A DNA stretch of 64,000 nt from NCBI RefSeq assembly GCF_964188315.1, contig NC_135657.1, positions 76,074,001-76,138,000 on the forward strand. The letters run 5' to 3'. The position numbers and the translations under genes were made by a program. Numbering within the stretch: position 1 is the first letter of the stretch; every line of letters begins with the position of its first letter. Shown piece by piece: positions 7,050 through 59,617 of the stretch. Source of the stretch: Podarcis muralis. Its lineage: Eukaryota. The notes under the pieces were generated by a model. That model saw only the letters and a list, made by a program, of their open reading frames with translations. It was not told the origin of the DNA and made no database searches.

Positions 7050-7291
7050 CAGTGGTAACTCAGGTTAAGAACTTAATTCCTTCTGCAGGTCTGTTCTTAA
7101 CCTGAAACTGTTCTTAACCTGAGGTACCACTTTAGCTAATGGGGCCTTCTGCTGTGGCTGCGCCACCGGAGCACGATTTCTGTTCTCATCCTGAAGCAAA
7201 GTTCTTAACCCGAGGTACTATTTCTGGGTTAGCGGAGTCTGTAACCTGAAGCGTCTGTAACCTGAAGCGTCTGTAACCCAAGGTACCACTG
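7050..7291. mobile_element. Tc1/mariner-type MITE, family A copy 1
   Basis: TA | CAGTGGTAACTCAGGTT ... AACCCAAGGTACCACTG | TA; 242 bp. Confidence 0.85.
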
Positions 7292-7897
7292 TATAGGACT
7301 CCAGTCATAAATTGTGGGCCAACAAATTAAAATGCCTTCTCCTTGACATTTTAGATTTGGAAGTGTGGGCGCTTTTTATTTTTTAAAAATAGGTTATTTA
7401 TAGCACTTGGATTCTGATGTTACATAGTACAGCAGAGGACTGTACCATATGCTTATGTGAATCATTGATTCACCTCTAAGACCTTATTAATGCAACCTTT
7501 TTGGTTTAATGCTTAATTCATCTCTGCTCCAGTTGTGTTCCAGAACTTTGTGCTGCCTAAGAATCTGTGTGGTTTTTTGACTCATCGGTTCAAGTATGGG
7601 ATGGCTGAACCTGGAAAGAAGGAATAGACTTTGTTCCTATGCTGGGTTTGAGAACTATACAGCTGCAGGAGTAATTTTTTTCTGGTGGGGCAGGAGGGAT
7701 GAGAGTTGCTTCTGAAGGAGTAGGAAATCTAATACTGACTCAGTAGGAAAAGACTTCATTGATTCCTTTTGGCTTTTGAAATGGATACCATGCTGTGAAG
7801 ATACAATATTACTAGTGCTTTTAGTATGGAGCTTAGTAATTCAGCCACAAAAGTGCTATGTGTGGAACTAGTTTCCAGATCCTTCATTTTTGCCTCT

Positions 7898-8193: not shown

Positions 8194-9204
8194 TAATAAC
8201 TTTAGTAAAATAACCATTCTAGTGTGCATAGGACATTTATTTTTATGTTTTTGATGAGGGTCTAATCATACAGCCACCATCTGCAGCCTCCAATGGTACA
8301 GTATAGGAGCAGTTTTACTATGCAATGAGCTTTTTTGTCTGGAGAGTGTCTCAGTAACTTATAATTGAAATAAATTGTAAATTATCCTAAATGGTACTAA
8401 ATCCCTAATGTAGCTGAATAGTTTAAAATACTTCTGCAAGAACAAATAAGTTCTGAGCTACTCTTCCATGAAATTATCTTTAGCCAATTTTAGGTTTTGT
8501 GTGTTTTACAAAAATGGCACAATAGCAATCAAGAGTAGGTTAGCTCCAGCTTTTTGTGGAACAAAGGCTTATCACCAGCTCTACCCAAATCCTATTTTAG
8601 CATCCATATGCAGAATATTCTGGTTAGCTTTGCTAACATGTTTTATGCTATAAGATTTACTGCCCCAAAATGCACTCTGAGTAGCTTCAGGCAGTCAAAA
8701 GAAGTGTTAGAAAGGAGCACAGGTGAGTTGTACCTTCTCTCATGCTTGCTTAAACCATCTGAAGCTGAGACTATGCACCTGCATCCATAGGATGATGATC
8801 AGATCACACAAACACACACTTATCTCATCATGAAAGATGGTGTGGGCTCACTTACAGATGTCCTAAACAAGAGCCAGTATGGATTTTCCAATCACTGCTG
8901 TTAGTTTGGAACACTGACTGGCATGTTTAGTTATAATTTTCTGCAGCTGACTCACAGTATGTGCTATACAGCAAGCTCCCACACCACCTTGAATCTGTGG
9001 TGATAGTGTAGGACTTTCTTCCCCCCTGCCCAGAGGCTCTGAATAGTCCTAGCCAATGACGACTCCTTACATTGCCAAATAGTTTTCTAAATTTGCTTCC
9101 ATATTTTTTTAAGCACCATCTCCCAGTTTATTTTTCTCCTTCCTGTCTCCATATATATATTGTACAGAGCTTTCTATATTTTATTTAAAGTTGCATTAAG
9201 ATTA

Positions 9205-9446
9205 CAGTGGTACCTCGGGTTAAGTACTTAATTTGTTCCGGAGGTCCGTACTTAACCTGAAACTGTTCTTAACCTGAAGCACCAGTTTAGCTAATGGGGC
9301 CTCCTCCTGCTGCCGTGCCGCCGGAGCACGATTTCTGTTCTCATCCTGAAGCAAAGTGCTTAACCCGAGGTAATATTTCTGGGTTAGCGGAGTCTGTAAC
9401 CTGAAGCGTATGTAACCTGAAGCATGTGTAACCTGAGCTACCACTG
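9205..9446. mobile_element. Tc1/mariner-type MITE, family A copy 2
   Basis: TA | CAGTGGTACCTCGGGTT ... AACCTGAGCTACCACTG | TA; 242 bp, collinear with copy 1. Confidence 0.85.
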
Positions 9447-12400
9447 TATGCAGAATTATGGTGTGATTTCTAAGTGTTAGGTGACATCTAGGATTTCCCC
9501 TTCCTGAATGAGGGTTAGGTTCACAAACAGGGTGCTTCTGTGAGTAGAAGCACTTTCATGAAGCAAAAATGTTGGATATCATCTAAAATGCTGAATGTGT
9601 ACTTACACTGGTTTTTCTTGTCTTAAGATAAGAATTGGGAATAGGCTGCAATGACCAATGCAGATTAAGTAAGGACACTCAGATGCAAACGTATTTGCGT
9701 CCTGCTACCAACTAAATTGCTTTCAGCATGAGTGTTTGAAAATGTGTTTCAATGTCCATATCCACATTCTGCTTCTACGGCTTGTGCAACCGTAACTAGT
9801 ACTGGATGTGGAATGACAATTTTCCAGTGACAGAAATGTCACTAAAAGAAAAGGAGAAAGAAATCCACACTGAAATGTAAAGGCAAAGTCTAGCGCTTGG
9901 AATGCTGTAAAGTGCAGGTGAGGGATTTATTTGCATTGCATTTTCAATCACAACCATTGAAAAATAAAAGCTTGATAGTCAGACCTTCTGACACCTACAC
10001 CAGCCAGGACATATGATGTCAGTCAAAGCTCTACCCACATGAACACAATAAAAATGGGATACCATAGGGAAAATTTACTGTGCCAGATTATCACAGAATT
10101 TAGAAAGTAGTGGAGGTGGAAAGCGTAAGATCTATTAATACCATGATAACCACCACAAATGAGCATAGGAGTGATGGATTTCAATACCTAGTCTGGTCTG
10201 GAATGAAGCAGGTGAAAAGGAAGTGCATTTGGTTATATGAACTTAAAGGAAGTAGACAATAGATGTAATTAAAAAGTGAAGGTGTTCTAGGGAGAGCCAG
10301 GGAGCTCTTTCCTGTCAAGGGCTGGATTTGCTAGGGGGAAATTATTATTCAGGGGTTGCATGCCACCAAAGGGAAGGATTCTTTAACCCTCTCTGCCAAC
10401 CCCTTTTTACTTTCCCTCTTAGTTTCATTGGGAACAGATTATTGTTGCCAGAAATCTGAACTGATCACTTGTGTTGACTCTCCGCCTCCCTGCACCCCTC
10501 CATCTGATTTTGCTCGCTTGTCCTCCTGGTTTTCCCATCCTTCCCTCTGGGTGCTCTTCCCACCCAAGTCTGCATGAAAGCCAAGGACCACATGTTCCCT
10601 GTCTCTGGGCCAGGGCAAGGAAAGTGACAGAAGATAGCATAGAAAAGGAGAAGAGCCTGCAAAAGCAAGTGGATTCAGAGATGGGTATAATGGCCGGGTT
10701 GGGCATTTTGTGTGTGTGGCTGATAGCAGTATCAGTCTTGACTGTGCCAAGCACAGCTACAGATGGCATAAATGAGGAATGGTGGAGAGGGACGAAGGAG
10801 CTGAAAGCAGATAAACACACATGGAAAGTGGGAAGGTGTGTGGGAGAGCTGTACAGATCCAAATCTGAAATAACAGTGAAACTAAGACTCTGAGACCAAG
10901 AGATTTGAGACTACTTTTACTTTACGTGGAGGCCTCCGTACTACATGGCCAACTGCTTTTGAAACTGAGGGAGTTTCAAAAGCTGGTTATGACATGTCTG
11001 TTCAAAGAAAACAGGCCCTTGTGTAAGCCTAATTAGTCCATTTTATCCCAAGTATGATCTGGAGAGCATTTGCTCTGTGTAATGCACTTATTCCTCATTT
11101 GCCGAGCAACTTGTCCAATTGTAGCCCATTGAAACAAGTGGGAAGGAGCTTCAAAAGTTTTGCTTTGTTAAATTACATTATTGTAACCTTCATTCTACAT
11201 CAAACTGAGGGCAGAAACCTCAAAATCTTTTGCTGTTTACTGTGTCTGGTGCCTAGCGTGCGTGTCTGGCAGAGACGGGTGCTCAAAATACTTTGAGCAA
11301 ACCTAAACTGGTAGCTATTTGATGTTTCAGTTGTGGGCTGAACATAATAAGCATTTTATATATAATAATCCAGGCTCTCTCCCCAATTATTTACAGCTAG
11401 CCACACTATTTGTTTTATTAGCGTGATTAATTACGTTAGTGACTTTGCATGAGTGGTAGTATAAATTCCTTTGTAGTCTATTTCTGGTGTAGATAGGAAC
11501 ATGGTTGTAAAATTTAGAAGCCTGTAGCCAGATGGATTAAAGTGTTGCTAAGGAAACAGACTTGGAAATGAAGTGGCAGCAGACTGTCCACAGAACATCA
11601 TGCTGTTTGGAACTGGTATTTTAGGTTCATGCAGATAGATAAAACAGAAGTATGAAATATTAATTTCCTGACTTTTTGAAAATACCATGTTAATTTTTAT
11701 TGCTCATTAATGTATACAAAGAACTCTACATGCTTTCCCTGTATCACAAAAAGTGAGAAGTCCACAGCAGTTTAAAGGGCACTCCAGTGGTTGGCCTCGT
11801 CTAGGTACAGATGTGGTCCATCACCTACTTAACTTAAGCAGTGATACGGGTCCCAGTTACATGTTTCTCAGGACTTGAGTGTTGAGTTGAAGAGCAGTGA
11901 TAGTCAGAATGTTAACAGAATTTAATTCATCTTGAAAACACAAGTGACGTTTGGATCTGTTTAGCAATGTTGGAAGATGGTGACTTGCTCAAGGGAACTT
12001 TGTGTCTTGCCAGATGATGGGTAACAGCTAAATTATACATTTTTTTAAAAATGAGGGATCAACCATTGCACATTTTTTTGCTCCCAGCAGTCTTAGATGC
12101 AATCTGAAACCTGTTTAGCACCTAAGAGAGCCTAATATGCATTTCTACTACTTTCTCCCAAATTCCATCTGTAGACTGACTAAATGCAGATTACGTGAGT
12201 TCAATGTCAACTGACATTTTTCTCCCTTGCTTGGTTTACCACCAAGCTTGGTGAAATGTTCTGGAGCTCAAAAACTTGCACATTATTTTGTGTCATTATG
12301 GGTTGGTTATCAGGCAACCCCCCCCCCAAACAGTGTGCAAGGGTTTGAGTTTGGGCCAATGTGGCTTATGGGAATCTTTCCTGTAAGCCAACATGTCTAC

Positions 12401-17181: not shown

Positions 17182-17338
17182 ACCAAAGCACTGCCATGAA
17201 GGGTGAAGCTTTACTTTCCCCCTGCTGGATCTCTAACTACGATTTGGGGCATGGCCATGGATCATGACACCACCCTTATATGCTAAAATGCCTTGAAGCC
17301 TCTTTATCTCTCCCTTGCATTCTGCTCTGTGGGAAGTG

Positions 17339-18595
17339 ATGTTTTTTTCTGCAATGCTGACGTCTGCTCATTCTGGGACATTCAATGCAACTTTTATTGT
17401 CTATGAAAATATGTACGCAAATATCACCACCCCCTCCTTCTTGGTTCGTAGTGGCACAACGCAGCCACTGAAATATCACTTGGGTGCCATGGTTATCACT
17501 GAGGTAACTACTCTGACAACCAACACTACAACTGCCCACCCATTGCAACCGGGCTCCAAGAGCTTAAGCCTGCCGCTCCAGGTAATTCTTTCTGCTGCCA
17601 TGATATTTATACTCCTCGTTTCTTTCCTTGGCAACCTTGTTGTCTGCCTAATGGTCTATCAGAAGACTGCAATGCGATCGGCTATTAACATTCTCCTCGC
17701 TAGCCTGGCTTTTGCAGACATGTTGCTTGCCGTGCTGAACATGCCTTTTGCTCTGATAACTGTCATCACAACCCGGTGGGTTTTTGGGAATATCTTCTGC
17801 AGAGTCTCGGCCATGTTTTTCTGGCTATTTGTCATCGAAGGGGTGGCCATTCTGCTTATCATTAGCATTGACAGGTTCCTTATAATAGTTCAGAGGCAGG
17901 ATAAGCTGAATCCATACCGGGCAAAGTTCCTCATTGCTGTCTCATGGGCTGCAGCCTTCGTAGTTGCTTTCCCGCTTTCTTTGGGAAACCCCAACCTGCT
18001 ACCTTCCAGAGCACCTCAGTGTGTGTTTGGCTACACAACAAGCCCTGGCTACCGTGCCTATGTGATACTGGTGGTACTGATTTCATTTTTCATCCCGTTC
18101 TTGGTAATGTTGTATTCTTTTATGGGCATCCTCAACACTGTACGGCACAACGCAGTTCGCATCCACAGCCACCCAGATAGCATATGCCTCAGCCAAGCTA
18201 GCAAACTTGGTCTCATGAGCCTTCAGAGACCCTTTCAGATGAACATTGATATGAGCTTTAAAACTCGTGCCTTCACCACCATATTGATTTTGTTCATTGT
18301 CTTCATAATCTGCTTGGCGCCCTTCACCACCTACAGCCTTATTGCCACATTCAACAGCCACTTCGATCAGAAGCACAACTTCTTCGAGATAAGCACTTGG
18401 CTCCTTTGGCTCTGCTACCTCAAGTCTGCCCTAAACCCATTGATTTACTACTGGAGGATCAAGAAATTTCACGATGCATGCTTAGACTTGATGCCGAAGT
18501 ACTTCAAGTTTTTGCCACAGCTACCTGGTCACACCAGAAGACGTATCCGGCCTAGCGCAGTATATGTGTGTGGGGAGCACCGGTCAGTTGTGTGA
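17339..18595 (+). CDS. GPR63: G protein-coupled receptor 63 (orphan class A GPCR), 418 aa, single coding exon
   Basis: True ATG at 17339; the track ORF starts 8 codons earlier on TTG. Seven hydrophobic segments with GN, LAFAD, DRF and NPLIY motifs. The C-terminus RRIRPSAVYVCGEHRSVV closely matches recalled human GPR63, and FHL5 synteny agrees. Confidence 0.97.
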   Translation: MFFSAMLTSAHSGTFNATFIVYENMYANITTPSFLVRSGTTQPLKYHLGAMVITEVTTLTTNTTTAHPLQPGSKSLSLPLQVILSAAMIFILLVSFLGNLVVCLMVYQKTAMRSAINILLASLAFADMLLAVLNMPFALITVITTRWVFGNIFCRVSAMFFWLFVIEGVAILLIISIDRFLIIVQRQDKLNPYRAKFLIAVSWAAAFVVAFPLSLGNPNLLPSRAPQCVFGYTTSPGYRAYVILVVLISFFIPFLVMLYSFMGILNTVRHNAVRIHSHPDSICLSQASKLGLMSLQRPFQMNIDMSFKTRAFTTILILFIVFIICLAPFTTYSLIATFNSHFDQKHNFFEISTWLLWLCYLKSALNPLIYYWRIKKFHDACLDLMPKYFKFLPQLPGHTRRRIRPSAVYVCGEHRSVV

Positions 18596-20224: not shown

Positions 20225-23200
20225 TATACAAATTTCAGGGTGCAAAGAGCTACTTTATGTATATACCCAATGGAAACTACCATTATTCCTTTGGAATGCC
20301 AAGCCTCTAAGTCCATGTCACAAACTGTTTCTGAAACTGCCCTTAGTTTCAAGAGAGATTTGTCACCTGGAATAGTGGTGCAGTTGCTTGAGAAACGTTA
20401 GAACAACTCTCCTTTGTGCCTGTGGAACTAATTGTATGGTCTTTTGGATCAAAAAGGAAACAGTACTAACTTTTATTCATAAAGGGACCAGATCTCCACA
20501 AGGTACAAATAAAAACTGTTAATATATTGGAGCTATTATTAATGCACTGATTTCTTCTGTATGAGAGGTTTTTGGAGGAGGGAATTCTTTTAAAATGCTT
20601 TAGAAAGTGAGAGTAAGCAGGGGTTTCATACTTCCACAGGCATTAATAAGTTATCTTACTTGCATTATCAACCAGATTTAATTCTTCTCCCTCTTTCTTT
20701 AGTCAAGTCATTTTGTAGGGTTGCATCAGTTACCAGCTTTACTTGTCTTGATGTTAGCCCTACAAACACCAGGTCCTATCTGAGAAAATATGAAAAAAAA
20801 GTATGGAAAATTATGTTAGGAATTACTCGAGAATACTTGCGTGCAATCTGTTAAATGAACTTAAAGATGCCAATATATTAAATCTATCATCAGTTCTACT
20901 GTAGTTTACAAGAGGGCTAGATATGTTTTTGCTGGGGTTCTTTTTAACCTAATTGATTTCTTCAGTGGCAGCAAATGACATAACTGAAAACCACTACTTG
21001 GTCAAACAGGAAGAAGCAATGCTGTTCCTCTGAAAATTAAGTATATATATTTTTTAAAGTTGTGTTATGGAAGAACATTTCATAGACTGAGGTGTGTTTG
21101 CTGTTGATGCTACTTTACCTAACTTATTTTTACTGCAGGGAGAATTCATTGCCTCCCATTAAATCTATTACTAAATGTTATCACTCTCTAACAAAGGAAC
21201 TTGTCAATGCTGTCAATAACCAGTGCCATTGTTCTGTCTTCCAAAGGAAAGCAACATAACCCGCCTTTATGTGGTAACTGAAAGGGATCCTCACCTTAAA
21301 AGGGGCAGCAAGGATGTACTACTGATCATGCTTCTTAATATCTATAAATTGACCTTGGATATCTGAGCTGGGCAAGCTCTACAACACGTAGACATCTGCG
21401 CCTAAAAGCTTCCATTGAAGCTGGAAACCTATTCACACAGAACTAGACACACAGGCTTCCCTAGCTTGGACATCCATGCTTAATGCAGAGAACCACATAC
21501 TGTGGGAGTCCTGTAATCGGTTGGCCATCTTCATGTGCTTAACATTTGAATGGGGGCTATCAATGCAATAAAATATAAATAGAGAGGCGAGAGATATCGG
21601 AATTTGTAGGACATTTGTTTTTCATGTATTTCTGAAGAGCAAAATGTTCTTGAAGTTATAGCAGCAAGTTATATGCGGGAAAACAATCTTCCTTCTAGTA
21701 GTGCATTTATTTATTTATTTTAGTTGTATCAGAATATGTACTCTTTACAGTGCCTGAGGGATCAGGTCTTGCACCTCCCTATGCAATGCAATCATGTGCA
21801 TTGTATTACCTACAGAGACAAACACTGGCCTCACTTTTCTATCTTATTTTCTTTATGGGTGCAGGTTAGAGTTCAACACAGCCAGCATATCTTCATACAT
21901 CGTGAGACAGTTTGGGCATCTCATCCTTTAAAATTGTGGGGTGGTTCTTACATTAAATGGCAGTGTAAGGTATACTCGGGTGTAAATTAGTACTTCTGTT
22001 CCTGTGACTGGAAAAGTAAAAGTAGAATGGATTTAAATTTGACCAAATAACACATACCAAACTTCACTAATTGACTACAATGCACAAAAAAATGCTGAAA
22101 GGTTTAGACCTTGACATTTGCAGGAAATATTTCTCCTTAAAACTTTTGCATTCAGAAAATAGCTTTCCTATGATGATAAGGCTTTCCTTTGTATACAGGA
22201 TGATTCTGTAAACAACAAGCATTCTTGAAGCATGAGCCTGTTGTGTTGACTTGGAAGCAAGTCTCACAACATGCAATGGGTCTTGCTCCCACGTTATGCG
22301 CCTAGGATTGCAGATGCTGTCTTCAGCCAGCATGCCTTGCTGCACTAGGTGGTGAGGGTATGGCTATGCTTATGCTGTACAACTGTGAATTTACTTTGCA
22401 ACAGAATTTGGTATCTGATGCAGTATATGACAGCCTGACTTTTTTTAGTGGCTTAGAAGTGAAGAAAAAAAAATCCTGTTTCAACAAAAAGGTTGGAAGT
22501 AAGAGGTGACTAGACAAAATGTCTCTCCCTCATTCTCTCTCTCTCTCCCCCCTTTCACCTGCTCTTCTGGTCTTTGTTCTCTGGATTTTTAAATTGTGCT
22601 GCACTTGGAATAGGTAAATATTAAAAAGATCTTTGTATGCTAGGAAAGCTATTAACAGGATACTGTGTGTTAAAGGGAAACGTGAGCATGTGTGATTTTA
22701 AAATGTGATATTGTGATATAGCACCATTGGCTCTGTTGCTTTTCACATGCTGTTTTAGAACAGTGCCTTGTTCTGTTGGGATGAATTTCTATATCCTCTT
22801 ACACTTGAGAAGCTTTCACTCCTACTGGTAATCAGCTGCACACATGCATACATTTACACTTCTCTAAAGTTTACACCCGTGTTTACAGAAGTCATTTTGT
22901 ATGCATTTCAGAAGGCAACAGTGAAGTAGAGATTTCCCCCCTCTCCAGAAAATAAAAAAAAATAATGATGTAAATCATGCCATTAATAAATTTTGGTAAG
23001 GACTTTTACCCTTTGTTTATTTTTCAAATACATATTTGCTTGACGTTCCTCCTTTTAATAATGGGGAAACAAAAAAGGGAGGAGATTGCAGTAGGAAGAT
23101 CAAACTGAATGTGATTTTTAAATATATATATTTATAGCTATCTAAACTACTTGTCAAAACTGTCATGGTTGTACAAACCTGTTGCTAAAGGGGGTTTTCA

Positions 23201-26714: not shown

Positions 26715-27060
26715 ATTGGGGAAGGCATATACCTTCAGTATACCTGAAGGAGCATCTCCACCCCCATCGTTCAGCCCAGACACTGAGGTCCAGCACCGAG
26801 GGCCTTCTGGTTGTTCCCTCAGTGTGAGAAGTGAGGTTACAGGGGACCAGGCAGGGGGTCTTCTCAGTAGTGGCACCCACCCTGTGGAATGCCCTCCCAT
26901 CAGACGTCAAAGAGATACAGAACTATCTGACTTTTAGAAGACATCTGAAAGCAGCCCTGTTTAGGGAAGTTTTTAACGTTTGATGTTTATCGTGTTTTTA
27001 ATTTTCTGTTGGGAGCTGTCCAGAGTGGCTGGGGAAACCCAGCCAGATGGGCAGGATAAA

Positions 27061-27108
<48 letters not shown>
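26715..27108 (+). mobile_element. L2 LINE 3' fragment with (ATT)16 tail
   Basis: Encodes ...FSVVAPTLWNALPSDVKEIQNYLTFRRHLKAALFREVF (L2 ORF2 C-terminus), then 3' UTR and (ATT)n at 27061-27108. Confidence 0.85.
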
Positions 27109-27109
<1 letters not shown>

Positions 27110-27111
<2 letters not shown>

Positions 27112-35200: not shown

Positions 35201-36741
35201 TTCATGTAATATGTTGCCAGTTATAAAATGAAGCTAGGCAAAGGCTCACAGCTGTAGATTCTTATTTTCTGCATGCCTTAGGGATGTCATGAGCATTCAA
35301 TCAAACATGCTTACAAAGCTGGTCAAATGCTTGCAAGGAAGATTGGTGTGACTACATCCCTGTGTGCTTGCTGAAATTCTGTGAGCCAACTCCATTGCCT
35401 CCCTTCAGCTGCAAGGCTCCTGAAAAAAATTACCTTGATGCTCGCGCAAAGGATGGCAACAGAAAGATGAGTGAGGGAACCACAAATGCACACAAATATG
35501 TACCTACTTTACTGAACCCAACATTTTTTGTGTTGGTGATTTTTCTTCAGGGGCACTGATTAAACAAAAAAGTTTTCTGTACTATCTCAGAGTCAGGGAA
35601 GATGCTGCAAATGAAGAATGGGTGTTTACAATGTAGATACAGATCTGCAAAAATGTAAGATGAATGAGCTCTTCGCCCCTGTGAGTTCACCATACTGAAA
35701 TGGTTATGGTGAATTCAACTATCTCATGAGCAGGCAAGCATAAAATGGTAAAGATTAAAGGATTAAAAATGCAGATAAAGTAAAGTGCTAGCTATGCAAT
35801 AGCACCTAGGAAGGCAGAATTGAAAAAACTGGCCAGTTCCAATTATTTAGCTTGAAAACTGGTTCTTAAGCAATTTAAAAGTTGTTCTTTGAAAGGAGGA
35901 GTAAATAATGTTGCTTTGATTAATTTCTTCTTTTTGCAGCAGCTTTTTTCATCTGGCTATTTCTGACCTACACTGTGTGGTAGGTGTGAACTGAGGTAAG
36001 CATTCTTTTACAAAATTACTTTTCTGCAGAACAATCAGCTGTCATTTTGTTCATTACGCCTTTCAAGATAGTGCTCAGGCTACACGGACAAAGCTTTTGT
36101 AGGAAGCCAGAAAGCATTCTACTAGATGTTTGAAAATAAACTCAAGAGAAGAATATGTGTAAGGAGGCAAGGTCTACTTTGAAGCTGTGATGTGCCTACC
36201 ATTCCAGTTTGTGAGTCGTCGTTAACAGAATTTTGGTTTGGAGCAGAGCTTGGCTAGGCCTTTTTGGCCATGGGCCACAACCCAGGTGATGATATGGTTG
36301 TGCAGAGCCAAGGCAGTCCCATGTAGCTCCTCTGAAATGCTACATTATATGCATGTTGATAACTGCTGTGCATTCTCATATTTACATAAAATATTGGTAT
36401 GTTTATGGATCCTTTGCCTCTCATATTAAATCTTCATTATGTTAGCTTTATACTTCATAATATGATAACAAGCAAAGAGCTCTGCTGTCTTTAGAAGCTC
36501 TGGGGAAGGGGAAATTAGAACATGTCCAACTTGTCATACACATGTATGACAAACTGCATCTTCTGAAATTCAACCTGCTGTACAACTGTATGGCAGTCAC
36601 TACACCTGATCTTTGATCTACAGCTAGGATGGGCAAATCTGTCAATTTGGATTTCCCTTTGTTTCTCATTTTACAAACTTTCATTCAGTTTTCATTTCCA
36701 CATCAGTCCCCCCTTTTTCACAAAAGAAGTCCTCGTGAAAA

Positions 36742-37126
36742 TGTTGGGAAACTGCCAGGGAGATATAGTCCATCATGGCCCCAAGCCGGCTGCCGGACTT
36801 CCATCGATCTCCCGTAGCCAGGCAGATCCAGCAGTTAGCGACACGAAGCCTTAGAAATAGATTGCCACATTCTAGGCTTGTGCACACTGTTCTTTATCAG
36901 CAGAAAACACAGCCAGAAAGCTTGCACCGAAGAAGAGCATAATTTACAGATTTTATTTAGCGTTGAACAGAACAAAGAGAAAACATGACCGTTCTGAGTC
37001 AGTGACTCCGACCGACTGAAATCGAAAGGAAACAGCAAGCATAAACATCCTGTGACTAGGACATGCGCAGACTCTGTGACTCTCAAAGCCTGCTCTCTCT
37101 TAAGGTGGAACGGAAATATCCTAACA
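36742..37126 (-). repeat. 3' LTR of the Copia element
   Basis: TGTTGGG...CCTAACA on the plus strand. No difference from 41454-41838 found by eye. Minus-strand AATAAA at 36952-36957. Confidence 0.97.
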
Positions 37127-40100
37127 TCCTCCCCCTTTCCGTGTAACCTGTTGTACCTGTGGTTCACTCAATTGCAACCTTTGTACATAAACCTTATGTT
37201 GTTCTCTGTTAACAACCTTAGACAACAGATCAGCAGGAATTTCGTTTCCTGGCATGTAGGACACCTGAATCAGTCCTTTCTGAATACACTCTCTTGCACG
37301 ATGTAGCTTAATCTGCAAGTACTTGGTTCTTTGCTTGCAACTCTCGGAGTTCAGCAAAGCCAAACACGATCTATTGTCTTGATACACTTGTATAGGACAT
37401 TTCACAGAAACCCCGATGTCCTTAAACAGTTGCATCAACCATTCACAATCCATGAGTGAAAATGACAGAGCATTGAGTTCTGCTTCACAGGAACTTAGGC
37501 TCACTGTTGTTTGCTTCCTGCACAACCAGTCAAACAGGCAGTGGTTGTACATGTAGCATACTCCAGAAGTGCTTGTACCATCTGTGGTGTCACTTCCAAA
37601 ACTTGCATCTGCAAAGATTTCAAGACCTCCAGTCTTCTGACTGGTGAACCTCAGCCTGTAGTGCATAGTCCCTTTCAAATAGCGGGCTATGCGCTTCAGA
37701 GCTTTCCAATCCTGAACCGTAGGATTGTTGGCATGTCTGCTAAGCAGATTACAGCTTACAGCTATGTCAGGTCTTGAACATCTGGCAATGAAATTCAGCT
37801 TACCTAGAATGCATCTGTACAGCGTTGTGTCAGAAAACGCTTCAGCAGTACTGTCTACCTGGTAACCTGTCACCATCGGTGTGTCTGCTGGGTTTGCATC
37901 AACCAAATTCAACCTGGTTAATACATCAGCAATTTTCTGTGTTTGGTGTACCAGAAAATTACCTGCTTGGTCCTTCTCCACCTGCAGAGAAAGATTGTTG
38001 GATACCTCACCAAGATCCTTCATGTCAAAGTGCTCCTTCAGCTGAGCTAGGGTGCTTTGATAGAAAGCCTGATTCTTCCAAAACATCAGAAGATCATCAA
38101 CAAAACATAAACAATACAGTTTGTTTTGCCCCTCCTCCTTGACAAACACACATGGATCAGCTTTGCCCTGGTGAAAACCTAGAGAAAGCAATGTCTCAGT
38201 GAGTTTTGTGTTCCAACACCTGGCACTCTGCTTGAGACCATATAAGGATTTCCGCAGTTTACAGACCATTCCCTTCTGTATCTGCATCCCGTCAGGTGGA
38301 AGCATAAACAGCTCCTCGTTCAAAATCCCGTACAAAAAAGCTGTATTAATGTCATGATGAGAAACATGCAGTTTCTCCTCCGCAGCGATCTTGAGCATCA
38401 GCCGAATGCTCTCATATTTGACTGTGGGTGAGTAGGTCTCGTGGTAATCCTGTCCTGGTACCTGTGAAAAACCTCTGGCAACCAATCTGGCTTTGTGTCT
38501 GACAACCTTGCCATTCTGGTCTGTCTTGGCCTTGAAGACCCATTTGCTGCCAACCAGTCTCATACCTGGGACTACCGGTACCAGCTCCCAAGTTTGGTTC
38601 CTGTTCAAGGAATCAACTTCAGCCTTCATGGCATTAAGCCAAGGCTCAGCATCTTTAGAGGTTAACTCCTGAACCTCTTTGAAGCTTGAAGGTTCCCATA
38701 CCTTCTCTGAGCTACTAAGAACAGCAGTTGCAGTCTTAGCAAACTCATCAGCAAATCTCTTAGGAGGTCTGCCTTTGGTCGCCCTTTCAGACCTACGTAC
38801 TAGACGCAAGTCTTCTGGACTCATCTCCTCTTTCTTAGGAGAAAAGTGACCAATGGTGAACAGTGGTTCTTCCAGTTCATTGTCAGACGCATCAGATGGT
38901 CTGACTGAGGCCTTTGCGCTCTGGTAGTCTGCTGTGTCATCACTGTCACTGACACCAGCAGCCGCACCGCCCACTGAACTGGAATCCGAACTCTGATCAT
39001 CATCATCATCATCATCATCATCCTCATCATCCTCAGCAGCTTCCTCAGCTTTAGCTGCTTGCTTGACATCACCTTCATCCTCCTCTGGGTAACTCTGGAA
39101 AATTCCCACATTTTCCCCCCACTTAGGATTGTACTCAACACTCCTTGTGAACTTTATGGATTTAGAGTCAGTCATCCATACCCTGTATGCACCTTTTTCG
39201 TACCCCATGAACAAACCATGTGCCCCACGCTTCCCAAGCTTGTTGGTTTGTGGGGTGCGTACCCACATGTCAGAACCAAAAATTCTCATGTGTTTGGTGT
39301 TGGGTTTCTTGCCAAACATCTTCTCATAGGGGGTACAACCAATGGGTGATGACAATCTGCGATTAATGGAGTAAACCAGATTTCCTAAAGCCTCCCCCCA
39401 AAACTTATCAGGGAGATTGGCATCATGCAACAAGGTTTTCATTCCTTGCAGCAATGTCTGATTTGCTCTCTCCGCAAGCCCATTCATCCATGGCGATCTG
39501 GGGGTTGACATGTCATGCTGGATTCCCTTCTCAGTCAGGAAAGCTTCAAACTGCTGAGAAGTGAATTCCCCGCCCCGATCGGTAAAAAGACAGGAAATAC
39601 GTTTACCGTGAGCATTCTCCAACCAAGCACAGAATGCCTTAAACTTCGGAAACGCTTGCGATTTCTGTTCGAGCAAAAACACATGAATGTACCTAGAAAA
39701 AGAATCAATTAGAACCATGAAGAACCTTGCTCCTCCTAAAGAGGGCGTAAGTGGCCCAACCAGGTCTGCGTGCACTAGCTGGTAGGGCTTGGAAGCCTGC
39801 CTGCTAGACACTTTGCCTTTTGGAGCAACCTTCACCTTGTTCTCAGCACAAGATACACATTTCATGTGATATTTACAGGGTTTGATGTTCAAACCCTCAA
39901 CCACCTCTGGCATCTTGGCCAGTGCCTTCCAAGAGAGGTGACCAAATCTTCGATGCGCTTCATGAATGCAACCTGCATGAAGAACTTTGTTAGTTTGTGC
40001 AACACAACAAGAATCAGCATTAGATACAACAGCAGTGTCCTCATAAGTTATATGGAACAAACCATCCATAAACTTTGCATGCAAATAGTCCTCTTTGCCT

Positions 40101-41212
40101 TTACTGATGACACAGACGCTCCTCTTGAAGGAAATCTGAAAACCACGTCCAGTAAGCTGCGGGACGCTCAACAAATTGCTTGCAGCTCCAGGAACATACA
40201 GAACATTACTGATGGTTGTATGCAAACTTGCAAGTTTCACAGTCCCTTCTCCTGCAATTTGCAACGTCCTTCCATCAGCCAGGTGGATCTCACCTTCCTG
40301 AGGCTTGAAAGAGATAAAGAGGTGCCGATCCTTTGAGATGTGGCGGGTACAGCCCGAATCAACAACAAAGCTGCCTTTGGCTGTTGGAGCAGCCTTCACA
40401 GCAAGCAAACCCTTGTTTTCCACTTGCTTGGGCTTTTGCAGCTTGCCCCCCTGCTGCTCCTGGCCAGCAGACGTGCCTTTAGCCTTTGGTGAAGCTGTGC
40501 CAGCAGACATAGCCTTGTCTTCCACTGGCGTGGGCTTTTGCAGCTTGCCCCCCTGCTTCTGGTCAGCAGACGTGCCTTTAGCCTTTGGTGAAGCAGTGCC
40601 AGCTAACAAAGCCTTGTTTTCCACTGGCGTGGGCTCTTCACCCTCCCTTCGCTCCTGGCCATCTGCAGATGTCTGCGTCTGCGTCTGTTTACCTTTGCCT
40701 TTCCGGCCTCTGCAAAGGCGATGACCTTGGTTCTCACGAGAAACAGAGCTCTCAGCTGCTGACTCCTTGGCTCCCCCTGGAGGCTGGAATGCTGCCTGGG
40801 ATGACGTGACGGTCAGCTCCCCCTGCAGCTTGCAACCGGTGCCCTCAGCATCCCTGCATTCACTCGCATTCTGGGAAACAGCTTGGACCTCCGATGCAGT
40901 CAAACTCTGGGCTGGGACGACTGAGTTGTGAGCTTTCATCAAAGCATACCACATTCCACGTGCAGTGGTGTTGCCAGCCAGCGTCTTAATTTCCTCAAGA
41001 GATACGGATAAGACTATTACGTCAATCGCCCTCGAATTCTGGGCCTCCCATTTCTCTGTCAGAGGAACTGGGGGGGCTTGAGACACAGTATGCCACACTC
41101 CATACTGACGCAGCAAACTCTCACACCATTTTGCCCAGGTCTGATAATTGTGCCGATTTAACTTTGGGCACTCAGTGGCCTCTGAAGCTTCAAAAGCGTG
41201 GAAAAACTCCAT
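37121..41212 (-). CDS. Copia Gag-Pol polyprotein, 1363 aa, uninterrupted
   Basis: ATG at 41212. Gag N-terminus PKLNRHNYQTW; protease VVDSGCTRH (D285, 40358-40360); HRRFGH/CVSC zinc domain; integrase HADLVGP, TDRGGEF, NGLAER; RT KARLVARGFSQ, YGLKQ, FVDDLL (38093-38104); RNase H FADAS, SCEAE, YQDN, ADLLSK. Confidence 0.97.
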   Translation of the reverse strand: MEFFHAFEASEATECPKLNRHNYQTWAKWCESLLRQYGVWHTVSQAPPVPLTEKWEAQNSRAIDVIVLSVSLEEIKTLAGNTTARGMWYALMKAHNSVVPAQSLTASEVQAVSQNASECRDAEGTGCKLQGELTVTSSQAAFQPPGGAKESAAESSVSRENQGHRLCRGRKGKGKQTQTQTSADGQERREGEEPTPVENKALLAGTASPKAKGTSADQKQGGKLQKPTPVEDKAMSAGTASPKAKGTSAGQEQQGGKLQKPKQVENKGLLAVKAAPTAKGSFVVDSGCTRHISKDRHLFISFKPQEGEIHLADGRTLQIAGEGTVKLASLHTTISNVLYVPGAASNLLSVPQLTGRGFQISFKRSVCVISKGKEDYLHAKFMDGLFHITYEDTAVVSNADSCCVAQTNKVLHAGCIHEAHRRFGHLSWKALAKMPEVVEGLNIKPCKYHMKCVSCAENKVKVAPKGKVSSRQASKPYQLVHADLVGPLTPSLGGARFFMVLIDSFSRYIHVFLLEQKSQAFPKFKAFCAWLENAHGKRISCLFTDRGGEFTSQQFEAFLTEKGIQHDMSTPRSPWMNGLAERANQTLLQGMKTLLHDANLPDKFWGEALGNLVYSINRRLSSPIGCTPYEKMFGKKPNTKHMRIFGSDMWVRTPQTNKLGKRGAHGLFMGYEKGAYRVWMTDSKSIKFTRSVEYNPKWGENVGIFQSYPEEDEGDVKQAAKAEEAAEDDEDDDDDDDDDQSSDSSSVGGAAAGVSDSDDTADYQSAKASVRPSDASDNELEEPLFTIGHFSPKKEEMSPEDLRLVRRSERATKGRPPKRFADEFAKTATAVLSSSEKVWEPSSFKEVQELTSKDAEPWLNAMKAEVDSLNRNQTWELVPVVPGMRLVGSKWVFKAKTDQNGKVVRHKARLVARGFSQVPGQDYHETYSPTVKYESIRLMLKIAAEEKLHVSHHDINTAFLYGILNEELFMLPPDGMQIQKGMVCKLRKSLYGLKQSARCWNTKLTETLLSLGFHQGKADPCVFVKEEGQNKLYCLCFVDDLLMFWKNQAFYQSTLAQLKEHFDMKDLGEVSNNLSLQVEKDQAGNFLVHQTQKIADVLTRLNLVDANPADTPMVTGYQVDSTAEAFSDTTLYRCILGKLNFIARCSRPDIAVSCNLLSRHANNPTVQDWKALKRIARYLKGTMHYRLRFTSQKTGGLEIFADASFGSDTTDGTSTSGVCYMYNHCLFDWLCRKQTTVSLSSCEAELNALSFSLMDCEWLMQLFKDIGVSVKCPIQVYQDNRSCLALLNSESCKQRTKYLQIKLHRARECIQKGLIQVSYMPGNEIPADLLSKVVNREQHKVYVQRLQLSEPQVQQVTRKGGGC
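37127..37140 (-). promoter_or_regulatory. Polypurine tract
   Basis: Minus-strand GGAAAGGGGGAGGA directly abutting the 3' LTR start TGTTAG. Confidence 0.9.
40411..40635 (-). repeat. Coding tandem repeat in Gag (102- and 99-bp units, about 2.3 copies)
   Basis: Units start at 40411, 40513 and 40612 on the plus strand. Peptide unit: PTPVE(N/D)KA..AGTASPKAKGTSA.Q.QGGKLQK. Confidence 0.95.
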
Positions 41213-41435
41213 TCCAGCTTTTTACTTGAGCCGTGAGCCTTTATGCCTTCTTATCTCGGCAGCTCATTAATCACGATGCCTTTTGGCTCGGCTCCCAGGC
41301 CAATTAAGCCTTGCCGGACATCAAAGGCTCCTTGTTGAGGTAAACAGAAAAGCCTCCGCTCTCGCTGCTTTCGCTTTTCACATACCTCTCAAACGCAGTC
41401 TGTTGCAGCTTTACTCTCCTGTAGGTGCTGTGAAT

Positions 41436-41449
41436 CTGGGCCCGAAACC
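41436..41449 (-). promoter_or_regulatory. Putative primer-binding site, variant of the copia half-tRNA-iMet type
   Basis: Minus-strand GGTTTCGGGCCCAG versus canonical GGTTATGGGCCCAG (12/14), lying 4 nt inside the 5' LTR. Confidence 0.7.
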
Positions 41450-41453
41450 TTGT

Positions 41454-41838
41454 TGTTGGGAAACTGCCAGGGAGATATAGTCCATCATGGCCCCAAGCCG
41501 GCTGCCGGACTTCCATCGATCTCCCGTAGCCAGGCAGATCCAGCAGTTAGCGACACGAAGCCTTAGAAATAGATTGCCACATTCTAGGCTTGTGCACACT
41601 GTTCTTTATCAGCAGAAAACACAGCCAGAAAGCTTGCACCGAAGAAGAGCATAATTTACAGATTTTATTTAGCGTTGAACAGAACAAAGAGAAAACATGA
41701 CCGTTCTGAGTCAGTGACTCCGACCGACTGAAATCGAAAGGAAACAGCAAGCATAAACATCCTGTGACTAGGACATGCGCAGACTCTGTGACTCTCAAAG
41801 CCTGCTCTCTCTTAAGGTGGAACGGAAATATCCTAACA
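41454..41838 (-). repeat. 5' LTR of the Copia element
   Basis: 385 bp and apparently identical to 36742-37126. Confidence 0.97.
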
Positions 41839-41993
41839 GAAAATTCATCAACATTTTTCTGGGCATTTCTCAGAAATGTTTGTATGCAATTTCCCTAATA
41901 TATGCATTTCTCCCCCAATACAATGCATTTTGGAATGTTATTGTCACTAATAAATGCATTTCTATGTACATTTTAATTTAGTATATGCATTTT

Positions 41994-47187: not shown

Positions 47188-47536
47188 GGGATACGGGTGG
47201 TGCTGTGGGTTAAACCACAGAGCCTAGGACTTGCCAATCAGAAGGTCCACAGTTCGAATCCCCGTGACGGGGTGAGCTCCTGTTGCTCGGACCCTGCTCC
47301 TGCCAACCTAGCAGTTTGAAAGCATGTCAAAGTGCAAGTAGATAAATAGGTACCACTCCAGTGGGAAGGTTAACGACGTTTCCGCGCGCTGCTCTGGTTC
47401 GCCAGAAGCGGCTTAGTCATGCTGGCCACATGACCCGGAAGCTGTACGCCGGCTCCCTCGGCCAATAAAGCGAGATGAGCGCCGCAACCCCAGAGTCAGT
47501 CACGACTGGACCTAATGGTCAGGAGTCCTTTACCTT
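47188..47536 (+). mobile_element. Full-length Sauria SINE
   Basis: tRNA-like head GGGATACGGGTGGTGCTGTGGGTTAAACC..GTTCGAATCC, core AAGTGCAAGTAGATAAATAGGTACC, tail CCTTTACCTT. TSD TACTC(T/C)GAATAGG. Confidence 0.92.
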
Positions 47537-58530: not shown

Positions 58531-58874
58531 CACTGAACTTGGGCCCTCCTCCTAAAGAATTCATTTTGGATCTGACCTTTCCCCAAGATGTTCAGAGGAA
58601 CATAGGCAGTTTCCTCTTCCATTTTTATCCTCCATAACCATCTTGTGAGTTTATTTTTAGTTTGTTTATTCATTTGATTTTTATATTGCTCCTTCTCCCA
58701 ACTGGGAGCCCAGAGCAGCATGAAATATAATTAAAATCATCTCATCATCACTAAATGCTTCACAGTGCCATAAAAAAATCTAAAACCATCAAGTAGTGTA
58801 CTAAAATTACAATCTAATATTTACAATTGGTGGGCCCCTGGCCATTCAGTTCCCAAAGGCCCGGGGTGAATTAA

Positions 58875-59455
58875 NNNNNNNNNNNNNNNNNNNNNNNNNN
58901 NNNNNNNNNNNNNNNNNNNNNNNNNNNNNNNNNNNNNNNNNNNNNNNNNNNNNNNNNNNNNNNNNNNNNNNNNNNNNNNNNNNNNNNNNNNNNNNNNNNN
59001 NNNNNNNNNNNNNNNNNNNNNNNNNNNNNNNNNNNNNNNNNNNNNNNNNNNNNNNNNNNNNNNNNNNNNNNNNNNNNNNNNNNNNNNNNNNNNNNNNNNN
59101 NNNNNNNNNNNNNNNNNNNNNNNNNNNNNNNNNNNNNNNNNNNNNNNNNNNNNNNNNNNNNNNNNNNNNNNNNNNNNNNNNNNNNNNNNNNNNNNNNNNN
59201 NNNNNNNNNNNNNNNNNNNNNNNNNNNNNNNNNNNNNNNNNNNNNNNNNNNNNNNNNNNNNNNNNNNNNNNNNNNNNNNNNNNNNNNNNNNNNNNNNNNN
59301 NNNNNNNNNNNNNNNNNNNNNNNNNNNNNNNNNNNNNNNNNNNNNNNNNNNNNNNNNNNNNNNNNNNNNNNNNNNNNNNNNNNNNNNNNNNNNNNNNNNN
59401 NNNNNNNNNNNNNNNNNNNNNNNNNNNNNNNNNNNNNNNNNNNNNNNNNNNNNNN
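58875..59455. other. Assembly gap (581 N) in the last FHL5 intron
   Basis: Run of N. It is flanked on the right by a truncated MITE end (…CTCGAGGTACCACTG|TA at 59575). Confidence 1.
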
Positions 59456-59617
59456 AATACAATCAGAACAAAACTAAAAGGGCGAAAGTCCTGGGACAAG
59501 GTTCTCAACTCGAGATAATTCCTCCAGGTTAGTGGAGTTTGTAACCTGAAGCGTTTGTAACTCGAGGTACCACTGTAGTTCATACAACATGCAGACACCC
59601 ATTGCTGACAGCAGCAA

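What the first reader, a model, noticed from the sequence alone, without database searches (positions are those of the whole stretch)
40373..41212. Recently inserted Copia whose Gag lacks the capsid C-terminal region and the CCHC knuckle
Seen in sequence: aa ~15-95 match the N-terminal part of Copia Gag (PKLNRHNYQTW...W...NSRAIDVIVLSVS...TARGMWYAL). Similarity then stops, and aa 96-280 are A/S/Q/G/K-rich low complexity. No C-x2-C-x4-H-x4-C exists before the protease; only NQGHRLCRGRKGKGK (aa 161-175) remains, which resembles the tail of the recalled Tnt1 knuckle (NQPGHFKRDCPNPRKGKG). Established: Copia Gag normally continues through helical capsid segments and a zinc knuckle used for particle assembly and RNA packaging. 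Yet the frame stays open for 4.1 kb and the LTRs look identical. Inference: either this is a Gag-defective, Pol-competent element packaged by a helper family's Gag in trans, or a vertebrate Copia lineage with a remodelled Gag that uses a basic disordered region instead of a knuckle.
Basis: partly seen in the sequence, partly recalled or inferred. Interest (0 to 1): 0.8.

Follow-up and report, generated by a model that had tools for sequence, protein, structure and literature searches.

The report
Lizard Copia element with half a capsid
A very recently inserted, otherwise complete Copia retrotransposon of a lizard encodes a Gag that keeps only the first of the two capsid domains and has lost its zinc knuckle; a diverged sister copy in another lizard shares this build, so it is a propagating lineage that probably borrows a capsid from a related element.

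Summary
Window 36742-41838 (minus strand) is a 5,097-bp Ty1/Copia element. It has identical 385-bp LTRs, a 5-bp target duplication and one 1,363-aa ORF with intact PR-IN-RT-RNase H motifs.

Only Gag aa ~11-105 match Copia Gag. This part folds confidently as the capsid N-terminal domain. About 70 residues forming the C-terminal capsid domain core are missing through an in-frame deletion. The CCHC knuckle survives only as a decayed remnant (aa 151-167). Residues 125-281 are predicted disordered, the second half is basic, and they include a 33-aa tandem duplication of the Gag/PR junction.

This is not a private deletion. A diverged Zootoca vivipara copy (P0160/L003) has the same architecture and is sister to the window copy in a Pol tree (99/97). 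A Podarcis relative with a full Gag lies outside that pair.

No other such Gag was found among 1.84 billion representative proteins.

Best reading: a Gag-dependent, Pol-competent lineage that uses a related element's capsid. Rice Tos17 and barley BARE-2 are plant analogues.

An autonomous remodelled Gag is not excluded. The copy number in the source genome could not be tested.

The parts
41839..41843 (-). Target-site duplication, 5' side (TTTTC)
   Evidence: Read directly. The same 5 bases follow the 3' LTR.
41454..41838 (-). 5' LTR, 385 bp, TGTT...CAACA, with AATAAA at LTR position 170
   Evidence: (0 differences from the 3' LTR).
41436..41453 (-). Primer-binding-site-like motif ACAAGGTTTCGGGCCCAG directly after the 5' LTR
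   Evidence: The motif GGTTnnGGGCCCAG sits in the same place in the Podarcis (L002) and Zootoca (L003) copies. Its resemblance to the half-tRNA-iMet site of Drosophila copia is recalled from memory and was not tested.
37121..41212 (-). Single Gag-Pol ORF, 1,363 aa; the stop codon lies in the first bases of the 3' LTR
40922..41182 (-). Gag capsid N-terminal domain (aa ~11-97), five helices
   Evidence: Pfam PF14223 positions 1-84 of 172. HMM positions 5-105. AlphaFold2 pLDDT 95-98. Foldseek aligns 85 columns to the Drosophila Copia capsid 8vvw_A at rmsd 1.7.
40835..40924 (-). Deletion junction (between aa 96 and 97) and remnant of the last capsid helix (aa 97-126). About 70 residues of the capsid C-terminal domain core are absent here.
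   Evidence: a 70-column gap against L002, P0001 and P0002. Helix 106-124 has pLDDT of only 63-80.
40712..40762 (-). Decayed zinc-knuckle remnant (aa 151-167; S and R where relatives have the first two Cys; H-x2-C instead of H-x4-C)
   Evidence: Alignment to the knuckle of the Podarcis copy. Regex negative.
40370..40840 (-). Predicted disordered tail (aa 125-281); aa 161-280 carry net charge +12
   Evidence: pLDDT below 55. Composition. No Pfam hit. No homologue other than P0160 in the 1.84-billion-protein library.
40399..40669 (-). Tandem repeat, period 99 nt (33-34 aa), 2.4-2.7 copies; it duplicates the Gag/PR junction
40139..40369 (-). Protease (Pol_BBD), active site VVDSG at aa 283
39128..40015 (-). 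Integrase: HHCC zinc region, DDE core (HADL, TDRGGEF, NGLAER) and SH3-like domain
37871..38599 (-). Reverse transcriptase RVT_2 (E 3e-67), FVDD at aa 1037
37124..37870 (-). RNase H region (ADAS, EAE and DNRS motifs)
   Evidence: No separate Pfam model matched it; the assignment rests on the motifs only.
37127..37140 (-). Polypurine tract GGAAAGGGGGAGGA abutting the 3' LTR
   Evidence: A near-identical tract occurs in the Podarcis copy.
36742..37126 (-). 3' LTR, 385 bp
36737..36741 (-). Target-site duplication, 3' side (TTTTC)

Best explanation
This is a young insertion of a lizard Ty1/Copia sub-lineage, probably lacertid.

Shown:
- Gag has been cut down to the capsid N-terminal domain followed by a disordered tail whose second half is basic.
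- The core of the capsid C-terminal domain was removed by an in-frame deletion of about 70 codons.
- The CCHC knuckle decayed in place.
- The Gag/PR junction was tandemly duplicated.
- Protease, integrase, reverse transcriptase and RNase H remain intact, and Pol was under purifying selection.
- The same architecture occurs in a sister copy in Zootoca vivipara.

Inferred:
- In the solved Copia capsid the C-terminal domain sits at the periphery of each capsomer and makes the CTD-CTD contacts thought to stabilise the shell. This Gag therefore cannot close a particle by itself.
- The lineage most likely replicates as a Gag-dependent, Pol-competent parasite of a related full-Gag Copia family.
- The helper would supply the capsid shell and nucleocapsid.
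- The conserved N-terminal domain would let the element's own Gag-Pol enter the helper's capsomers, whose centres are built from N-terminal domains.
- The shared PBS-like motif, polypurine tract and LTR ends would keep its RNA and cDNA compatible with the helper's machinery.
- The basic tail would give unspecific RNA binding.
For: Structure and recency:
- Identical 385-bp LTRs, TSD, PBS-like motif and PPT.
- All Pol catalytic motifs present.

Gag:
- Only the N-terminal domain matches.
- AlphaFold2 is confident only for aa ~15-97.
- Foldseek aligns 85-86 columns of the 184-187-residue Drosophila Copia capsid chains. The full-Gag relative P0001 aligns over 190-202 columns.
- The missing profile segment is the one that matches the Ty1 p22 CA-CTD.
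- Remnants align in frame to the Podarcis copy's last capsid helix, pre-knuckle linker and knuckle.

Lineage-level evidence:
- Zootoca P0160/L003 shares the MEF-H start, the N-terminal domain, the same gap, the GCK-Q-EL-V-S motif and the absence of a knuckle.
- It is sister to the window copy in the Pol tree (99/97). The alternative grouping of the window copy with the Podarcis copy is rejected (AU p 0.016).
- Repeat units differ by about 8% while the LTRs differ by 0%, so the remodelling long predates this insertion.

Selection:
- Pol dN/dS is 0.09-0.30.
- In the Gag N-terminal domain pN is below pS against both relatives (Fisher p 1e-3 and 4e-7).

Compatibility with a full-Gag relative:
- Same LTR termini (TGTT..CAACA), near-identical PPT and the same PBS-like motif.

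Background from papers:
- Roles of the Copia NTD, CTD and NC, and the RNA requirement for assembly (PMC11835246).
- Active gag-less Copia Tos17, and other non-autonomous elements reported to hijack another element's GAG (PMC3977881).
Against: - No helper element was shown in the same genome. The window holds no other Copia sequence, and the only full-Gag relative examined is a broken copy in another species.
- Only two copies with this architecture are known, and the Zootoca one is itself degenerate (PR DSG position reads SST; integrase partly deleted).
- If a helper supplied everything, an intact Pol and a conserved N-terminal domain would not obviously be needed.
- Co-assembly of a Gag holding only the N-terminal domain has not been demonstrated for any Copia.
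- The dN/dS values rest on near-saturated synonymous sites and on protein-guided alignments, which bias pN downward.
Confidence: 0.5

Rival explanations
1. Autonomous element with a remodelled Gag. The N-terminal capsid domain together with the disordered basic, repeat-bearing tail would suffice for RNA binding, chaperoning and some form of assembly or condensate. No C-terminal capsid domain, knuckle or helper would be needed.
For: - The N-terminal domain is conserved, with pN below pS, and folds confidently.
- The tail has net charge +12 over aa 161-280.
- The architecture persisted through a lineage split, and the element was mobile very recently.
- Ty1 Gag supplies nucleic-acid chaperone activity (PMC8458377). 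That it does so without a CCHC knuckle is my own knowledge.
Against: - Every solved Ty1/Copia, Ty3 and retroviral capsid uses a C-terminal capsid domain for lattice contacts (PMC11835246; fold matches). Ty1 keeps its CTD.
- The repeat units differ mostly by non-synonymous changes (about 7 to 1), so the tail shows little sequence constraint.
- No precedent is known for a capsid built from N-terminal domains only.
Confidence: 0.2
2. Accidental passenger. A Gag-defective master copy with no adapted function was transcribed and mobilised once or a few times by whatever Copia machinery was present. The architecture is decay, not a strategy.
For: - Only one copy in the window and two overall.
- The tail region shows weak or no constraint.
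- The knuckle looks like plain decay.
Against: - The ORF is open over 4.1 kb with all Pol motifs intact.
- The Gag N-terminal domain and Pol are under purifying selection.
- Several separate Gag changes accumulated while Pol stayed intact: the deletion, the knuckle changes, and the duplication followed by about 8% divergence between its units.
- The same architecture occurs in a sister copy of another genus.
Confidence: 0.2
3. Private post-insertion deletion confined to this one copy.
For: None beyond the absence of further copies in the window.
Against: - The LTRs have zero differences, so there has been almost no time for post-insertion change.
- Several independent changes are involved.
- The Zootoca copy shares the architecture.
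Confidence: 0.03
4. The truncated Gag acts mainly as an interfering or host-serving protein. It would resemble the capsid-fragment restriction factors Ty1 p22 and Drt2, here made from the N-terminal rather than the C-terminal domain.
For: - Truncated Gag fragments are known inhibitors (PMC8458377; PDB entries 7nli and 9rxy).
- The Zootoca relic keeps a long nearly open frame and is annotated as an isoform of a CARD-domain gene.
Against: - The window copy is a complete mobile element with LTRs, a TSD and intact Pol, not a domesticated gene.
- There is no expression or orthology evidence.
Confidence: 0.07

Closest known systems
Drosophila Copia (Ty1/Copia, Pseudoviridae) and its solved capsid (PDB 8vvw, 8s41)
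   Same: LTR structure, a single Gag-Pol ORF and the PR-IN-RT-RH order. The Gag N-terminal domain has the same fold (85 columns, rmsd 1.7). A PBS-like motif of the same general type (recalled from memory).
   Different: Drosophila Copia Gag has NTD (1-90), CTD (91-186) and an NC with a zinc finger (PMC11835246). The element here lacks the CTD core and the knuckle.
Rice Tos17 (active Copia without gag) and barley BARE-2
   Same: A Copia element with an intact Pol, a missing or defective Gag and proven or evident recent mobility. The presumed mechanism is use of a related element's Gag (PMC3977881).
   Different: Tos17 has lost gag entirely, without remnants. BARE-2 (recalled from memory) fails to express Gag. 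Here a conserved N-terminal capsid domain and a long disordered tail are kept and translated as part of Gag-Pol. The host is a vertebrate, and no helper has been identified.
Full-Gag lacertid Copia relative (Podarcis lilfordi locus L002) and P0001
   Same: The closest relatives: Pol is 66-74% identical at the amino-acid level and about 79% at the nucleotide level. Same LTR termini, PPT and PBS-like motif. Same clade with 100/100 support.
   Different: They carry the complete capsid (NTD and CTD) and a CCHC knuckle. The Podarcis copy is older (LTRs 95.8% identical) and is broken by frameshifts and stops.
Yeast Ty1 Gag
   Same: A member of the same superfamily whose Gag supplies nucleic-acid chaperone activity (PMC8458377). 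That it does so through a basic disordered C-terminal region without a CCHC knuckle is my own knowledge.
   Different: Ty1 keeps both capsid domains. Here the CTD is missing.
Squamate Copia, mostly the Mtanga clade (PMC11889832)
   Same: Copia is abundant in Squamata (23 of 24 species), so a Copia in a lizard is expected.
   Different: That survey classified RT/RNase H only and did not describe Gag. Membership of this element in Mtanga was not tested.

Membership tests
Ty1/Copia LTR retrotransposon | Direct LTRs ending TG..CA, flanked by a 5-bp target duplication | tested here: met
   385-bp identical LTRs, TSD TTTTC.
Ty1/Copia LTR retrotransposon | Pol domain order PR-IN-RT-RNase H with an RVT_2-type reverse transcriptase | tested here: met
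   Pol_BBD 282-358, gag_pre-integrs and rve 400-574, RVT_2 872-1114. Catalytic motifs.
Ty1/Copia LTR retrotransposon | Gag with a two-domain capsid (NTD and CTD) | tested here: not met
   Only the NTD is present. A 70-column gap against relatives.
Ty1/Copia LTR retrotransposon | CCHC zinc knuckle in the nucleocapsid (present in most but not all members) | tested here: not met
   No motif in any frame. A decayed remnant at aa 151-167. Nearly all of the top 60 hits carry one.
Gag-deficient, helper-dependent Copia (Tos17 / BARE-2 type) | Gag absent or unable to form a capsid, while Pol is intact | tested here: met
   The inability to form a capsid is inferred from the loss of the CTD and was not assayed.
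Gag-deficient, helper-dependent Copia (Tos17 / BARE-2 type) | Evidence of recent transposition | tested here: met
   0 differences in 385 bp between the LTRs, and an intact TSD.
Gag-deficient, helper-dependent Copia (Tos17 / BARE-2 type) | A co-resident autonomous partner with matching PBS or packaging signals | tested here: inconclusive
   A related full-Gag family with the same PBS-like motif, PPT and LTR ends exists in Podarcis. None is shown in the source genome, and there is none in the window.
Ty1-like knuckle-less Gag | Both capsid domains plus a basic disordered C-terminal chaperone region | tested here: not met
   The basic disordered tail is present, but the CTD is absent.
Mtanga clade of metazoan Copia | Placement of RT/RNase H within the clade on a reference tree | not tested
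PMC11889832 is cited only for context.

The most novel reading that the evidence does not exclude
A vertebrate Copia lineage that replicates autonomously without a capsid C-terminal domain and without a zinc knuckle. It would use an N-terminal capsid domain plus a repeat-bearing basic disordered region for assembly or condensation and for RNA handling. That would be an LTR retrotransposon life cycle without a conventional closed capsid.
Probability: 0.15. Interest if true: 0.85.

Novelty: new variant of a known kind. Interest (0 to 1): 0.45.

Why it matters
Gag-defective but Pol-competent Copia elements that live off a relative's capsid are documented in plants (Tos17, BARE-2). My literature searches found no such case described for vertebrates, where Copia is abundant only in squamates and has been surveyed by RT alone.

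This lineage is unusual in keeping exactly one capsid domain, the N-terminal one that forms the capsomer centre, under purifying selection while discarding the lattice-forming domain and the knuckle. If it is helper-dependent, it offers a natural test of which Gag parts a hitch-hiking Gag-Pol needs in order to enter a foreign particle. If it is autonomous, it would challenge the view that a two-domain capsid is indispensable for LTR retrotransposition. The identical LTRs suggest that the system may still be active in living lizards.

Tried and rejected
- **Hidden capsid or knuckle in another frame (compensating frameshifts).** tblastn of seven relatives' Gag and of the Podarcis capsid peptide against the element found nothing in other frames. 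The six-frame HMM scan of the window found nothing either. The nucleotide alignment shows that the frame change lies in the broken Podarcis copy, not in the query.
- **Captured host sequence as the origin of the tail.** There is no Pfam hit. Apart from P0160, the only match beyond about aa 155 among 1.84 billion representatives was one weak, low-identity, multi-stretch hit (P0158, E 3e-4), which looks compositional. The profile search found only P0160. The tail aligns instead to the linker, knuckle and pre-PR region of the Podarcis relative.
- **Recombinant origin** (Gag from one lineage, Pol from a full-Gag lineage). The Pol tree groups the query with the Zootoca copy, in agreement with the Gag characters.
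- **More copies.** There are none in the window and none in JGI metagenome contigs. No same-family protein appeared in the 5.8-billion-protein word-index search.
- **Phage database search.** It was irrelevant and found nothing.
- **phmmer of the query Gag against PDB sequences.** It gave no hit; only the fold comparison did.
- **Global MAFFT nucleotide alignment of the gag regions.** It was unreliable in the middle part and was replaced by local alignments.
Full report
**What is there**

The finding lies on the minus strand, inside a complete LTR retrotransposon at window 36742-41838 (5,097 bp).
- The two LTRs are 385 bp, begin TG and end CA, and are identical at every position.
- The same five bases, TTTTC, flank both ends.
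- A polypurine tract abuts the 3' LTR, and a PBS-like motif follows the 5' LTR.
- A single ORF of 1,363 aa (37121..41212) carries the following domains in Copia order:
  - Retrotran_gag_2 at aa 30-106;
  - the Pol beta-barrel protease at 282-358;
  - gag_pre-integrs and rve at 400-574;
  - the retroviral SH3-like domain at 633-695;
  - RVT_2 at 872-1114.
- The catalytic motifs of protease, integrase (HHCC and DDE), reverse transcriptase (FVDD) and RNase H are all present.
- No other copy, solo LTR or Gag-like coding exists elsewhere in the 64-kb window.

**Check of the observation**

- The Pfam Gag model matches only its first 84 of 172 positions.
- aa 96-280 alone match nothing in Pfam, even at E<=10.
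- I built an HMM from the Gag regions of 50 relatives, leaving the query out, and ran it with all filters off. The query matched HMM positions 5-105 and 245-299 and nothing between. The control P0001 matched throughout.
- No CCHC motif exists in any sense frame.
- Nearly all of the 60 best full-length relatives have one at aa ~190-330.
- Among 88 full-length hits, none had an N-terminal domain together with neither a matched C-terminal domain nor a knuckle; the window copy is the only polyprotein with that pattern.

**Structure**

- AlphaFold2 with a 51-sequence alignment gives pLDDT 95-98 for aa ~15-97 (five helices). One further helix, 106-124, reaches pLDDT 63-80. From aa 125 to 285 the values stay below 55.
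- Foldseek puts the two solved Drosophila Copia capsid structures (8vvw, 8s41) first, but over only 85-86 columns of their 184-187 residues.
- The closest full-Gag relative, P0001, was modelled in the same way. It is confident to aa ~205 and aligns over 190-202 columns.
- The profile of the relatives matches the Copia VLP protein at E 3.5e-54 across both domains and the knuckle. The profile segment that the query lacks is the one that matches the Ty1 p22 capsid C-terminal domain.
- According to the Copia capsid paper (PMC11835246):
  - the NTD is residues 1-90, the CTD is 91-186, and the NC with its zinc finger is 186-270;
  - NTDs form the centre of each capsomer and CTDs the periphery;
  - CTD-CTD contacts are thought to stabilise the shell;
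  - assembly needs RNA.
- So the element keeps the N-terminal capsid domain and has lost the C-terminal one.

**How the Gag came to look like this**

A Podarcis lilfordi gene model (P0097) contains pieces of a related Copia. Its locus, L002, holds a copy with Pol 66-74% identical in protein and about 79% in DNA.
- That copy is older (LTRs 95.8% identical) and is broken by frameshifts and stops. It still shows the full Gag: N-terminal domain, C-terminal domain helices and a CCHC knuckle.
- Local alignments show that the query reads in the ancestral frame throughout.
- aa 97-126 align to the last capsid helix of the Podarcis copy and of P0001 and P0002, after a clean gap of 70 columns.
- aa ~127-176 align to the pre-knuckle linker and the knuckle. 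S and R stand where the relatives have the first two cysteines, and two residues fewer lie between H and the last C.
- The last ~20 residues before the protease align to the relatives' pre-protease segment.
- That segment, together with the stretch before it, has been tandemly duplicated: 99-nt period, 2.4-2.7 copies, 88% matches.
- The tail is therefore a decayed and expanded linker and NC region, not captured foreign sequence. Apart from P0160, the only match beyond about aa 155 among 1.84 billion representative proteins was one weak, low-identity, multi-stretch hit (P0158), which looks compositional.

**Not a private deletion**

The only significant match to the tail in the 1.84-billion-protein library was P0160, a 389-aa Zootoca vivipara protein annotated as an isoform of LOC132593050. 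It is encoded in locus L003.
- It starts MEFLH (the query starts MEFFH).
- It has the N-terminal domain, the same gap, the shared motif GCK-Q-EL-V-S, an NQG string where the knuckle was, and no CCHC.
- A maximum-likelihood tree of Pol aa 281-975 places the query and the Zootoca copy together (bootstrap 99, SH-aLRT 97). The full-Gag Podarcis copy is their sister (91/91), and P0001 comes next.
- The alternative grouping of query with Podarcis is rejected (AU p 0.016). Shorter partitions agree with this.
- The truncated Gag therefore maps to one branch, the ancestor of the query and the Zootoca copy.
- The duplicated units differ by about 8% while the LTRs differ by 0%, so the remodelling is much older than this insertion.

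**Selection**

- Nei-Gojobori estimates against the Podarcis copy give dN/dS of 0.09-0.30 across Pol.
- In the Gag N-terminal domain, pN is clearly below pS against both relatives (Fisher p 4e-7 and 1e-3).
- The tail shows weaker constraint: 0.65 against the Zootoca copy.
- The two full repeat units differ by about seven non-synonymous changes, one synonymous change and a codon indel.
- Caveats: synonymous sites are near saturation, the comparators are decayed copies, and protein-guided alignment biases pN downward, most of all in the low-complexity tail.

**Mechanism**

Shown: a recently mobile element with a complete Pol, a conserved N-terminal capsid domain, no C-terminal capsid domain, no functional knuckle, and a basic disordered tail (net +12 over aa 161-280). 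This architecture is inherited within a lineage.

Inferred:
- Without the lattice-forming domain this Gag cannot close a particle.
- The lineage therefore most likely depends on the Gag of a related full-Gag Copia.
- The retained N-terminal domain would serve to bring its own Gag-Pol into the helper's capsomers.
- The LTR termini (TGTT..CAACA), the polypurine tract and the PBS-like motif GGTTnnGGGCCCAG are shared with the full-Gag Podarcis family. This fits compatibility with such a partner.
- Plant precedents exist. Tos17, the most active rice retrotransposon, has no gag at all and is thought to use the Gag of Lullaby. The Tos17 paper also notes that other non-autonomous elements hijack another element's GAG (PMC3977881). 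BARE-2 is such a case (recalled from memory).
- I put this reading at about 0.5.

Rival readings are:
- an autonomous remodelled Gag (0.2);
- an accidental passenger without adaptation (0.2);
- an interfering or host-serving fragment (0.07);
- a private deletion (0.03, contradicted).

**Host and age**

- The host was not identified.
- The sister and next-closest copies are from lacertid lizards, and the window shares interspersed repeats at about 90% identity with the Podarcis locus. A lacertid or other squamate host is therefore likely.
- Copia is known to be abundant in Squamata (PMC11889832). That survey used RT/RNase H only.
- With zero differences in 385 bp, and squamate neutral rates of the order of 1e-9 to 2.5e-9 per site per year (my recollection, not tested), the insertion is probably younger than one to three million years (inference).

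**Limits**

- I could not search eukaryotic genome DNA. Copy number, the Gag architecture of other family members and the presence of a helper in the same genome therefore remain untested.
- Only two copies carry the architecture, and the Zootoca copy is itself degenerate.

**Verdict**

This is a new variant of a known kind: a Gag-deficient, Pol-competent Copia, here in a vertebrate and with only the N-terminal capsid domain retained. Interest is moderate.

Noticed in passing
L003:10001-12640 (Zootoca vivipara, GCA_963506605.1 OY735914.1); protein P0160: The Zootoca sister copy is very diverged (28-32% aa identity in Gag-PR). SST stands at the protease DSG position, and parts of the integrase are deleted. 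Yet about 880 codons read in one frame with only 2 stops and pN below pS. It lies within the span of a CARD-domain gene and is annotated as isoform X7 of LOC132593050. It could be an annotation artefact, a separate fast-evolving non-autonomous sub-lineage, or an exapted fragment.
   Followed up: partly
window 41436-41453; L002:~22815-22835; L003:~9675-9695: The PBS-like motif GGTTnnGGGCCCAG is conserved just after the LTR end CAACA in all three lacertid copies. The two central bases differ: AT in Podarcis, TC in the window, CC in Zootoca. From memory, the Podarcis version is complementary to the anticodon stem-loop of initiator tRNA-Met, as in Drosophila copia. ARAGORN found no tRNA gene in the window to compare with it.
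   Followed up: partly
window 40370-40669: The 33-34-aa tandem repeat duplicates the segment that in relatives immediately precedes the protease, which is the probable Gag/PR processing region. The polyprotein may therefore carry up to three copies of that junction.
   Followed up: partly
window 17315-18595 (+): An uninterrupted 426-aa ORF (TTG start as listed) matches rhodopsin-family GPCRs (7tm_1, E 4e-48, full profile). It is probably an intronless receptor gene about 18 kb from the element.
   Followed up: no
window 38996-39035: An (ATC)13 microsatellite encodes a run of aspartates in the long acidic linker between integrase and reverse transcriptase.
   Followed up: no
window 47188-47536, 7046-7293, 9203-9448, 26736-27110: Interspersed repeats of about 250-380 bp are shared at 84-92% identity with several places in the Podarcis lilfordi locus L002. 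They look SINE-like and suggest a lacertid or related squamate host.
   Followed up: no
window 58875-59455: A run of 581 N (an assembly gap or masked stretch), left untouched. The ORFs listed across it (58821-59598, minus strand) are artefacts of the N run.
   Followed up: no
L003:19565-20899: A second, different Copia-like fragment (35-39% aa identity to the query's protease and RT) lies about 7 kb downstream of the Zootoca copy.
   Followed up: no
protein P0100 (1,501 aa, cluster of 156 members, ENA): A distant Copia polyprotein in which the N-terminal capsid domain and the CCHC match the family HMM, but the ~95 residues between them do not. This may be another lineage with a replaced or strongly diverged C-terminal capsid domain.
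   Followed up: no
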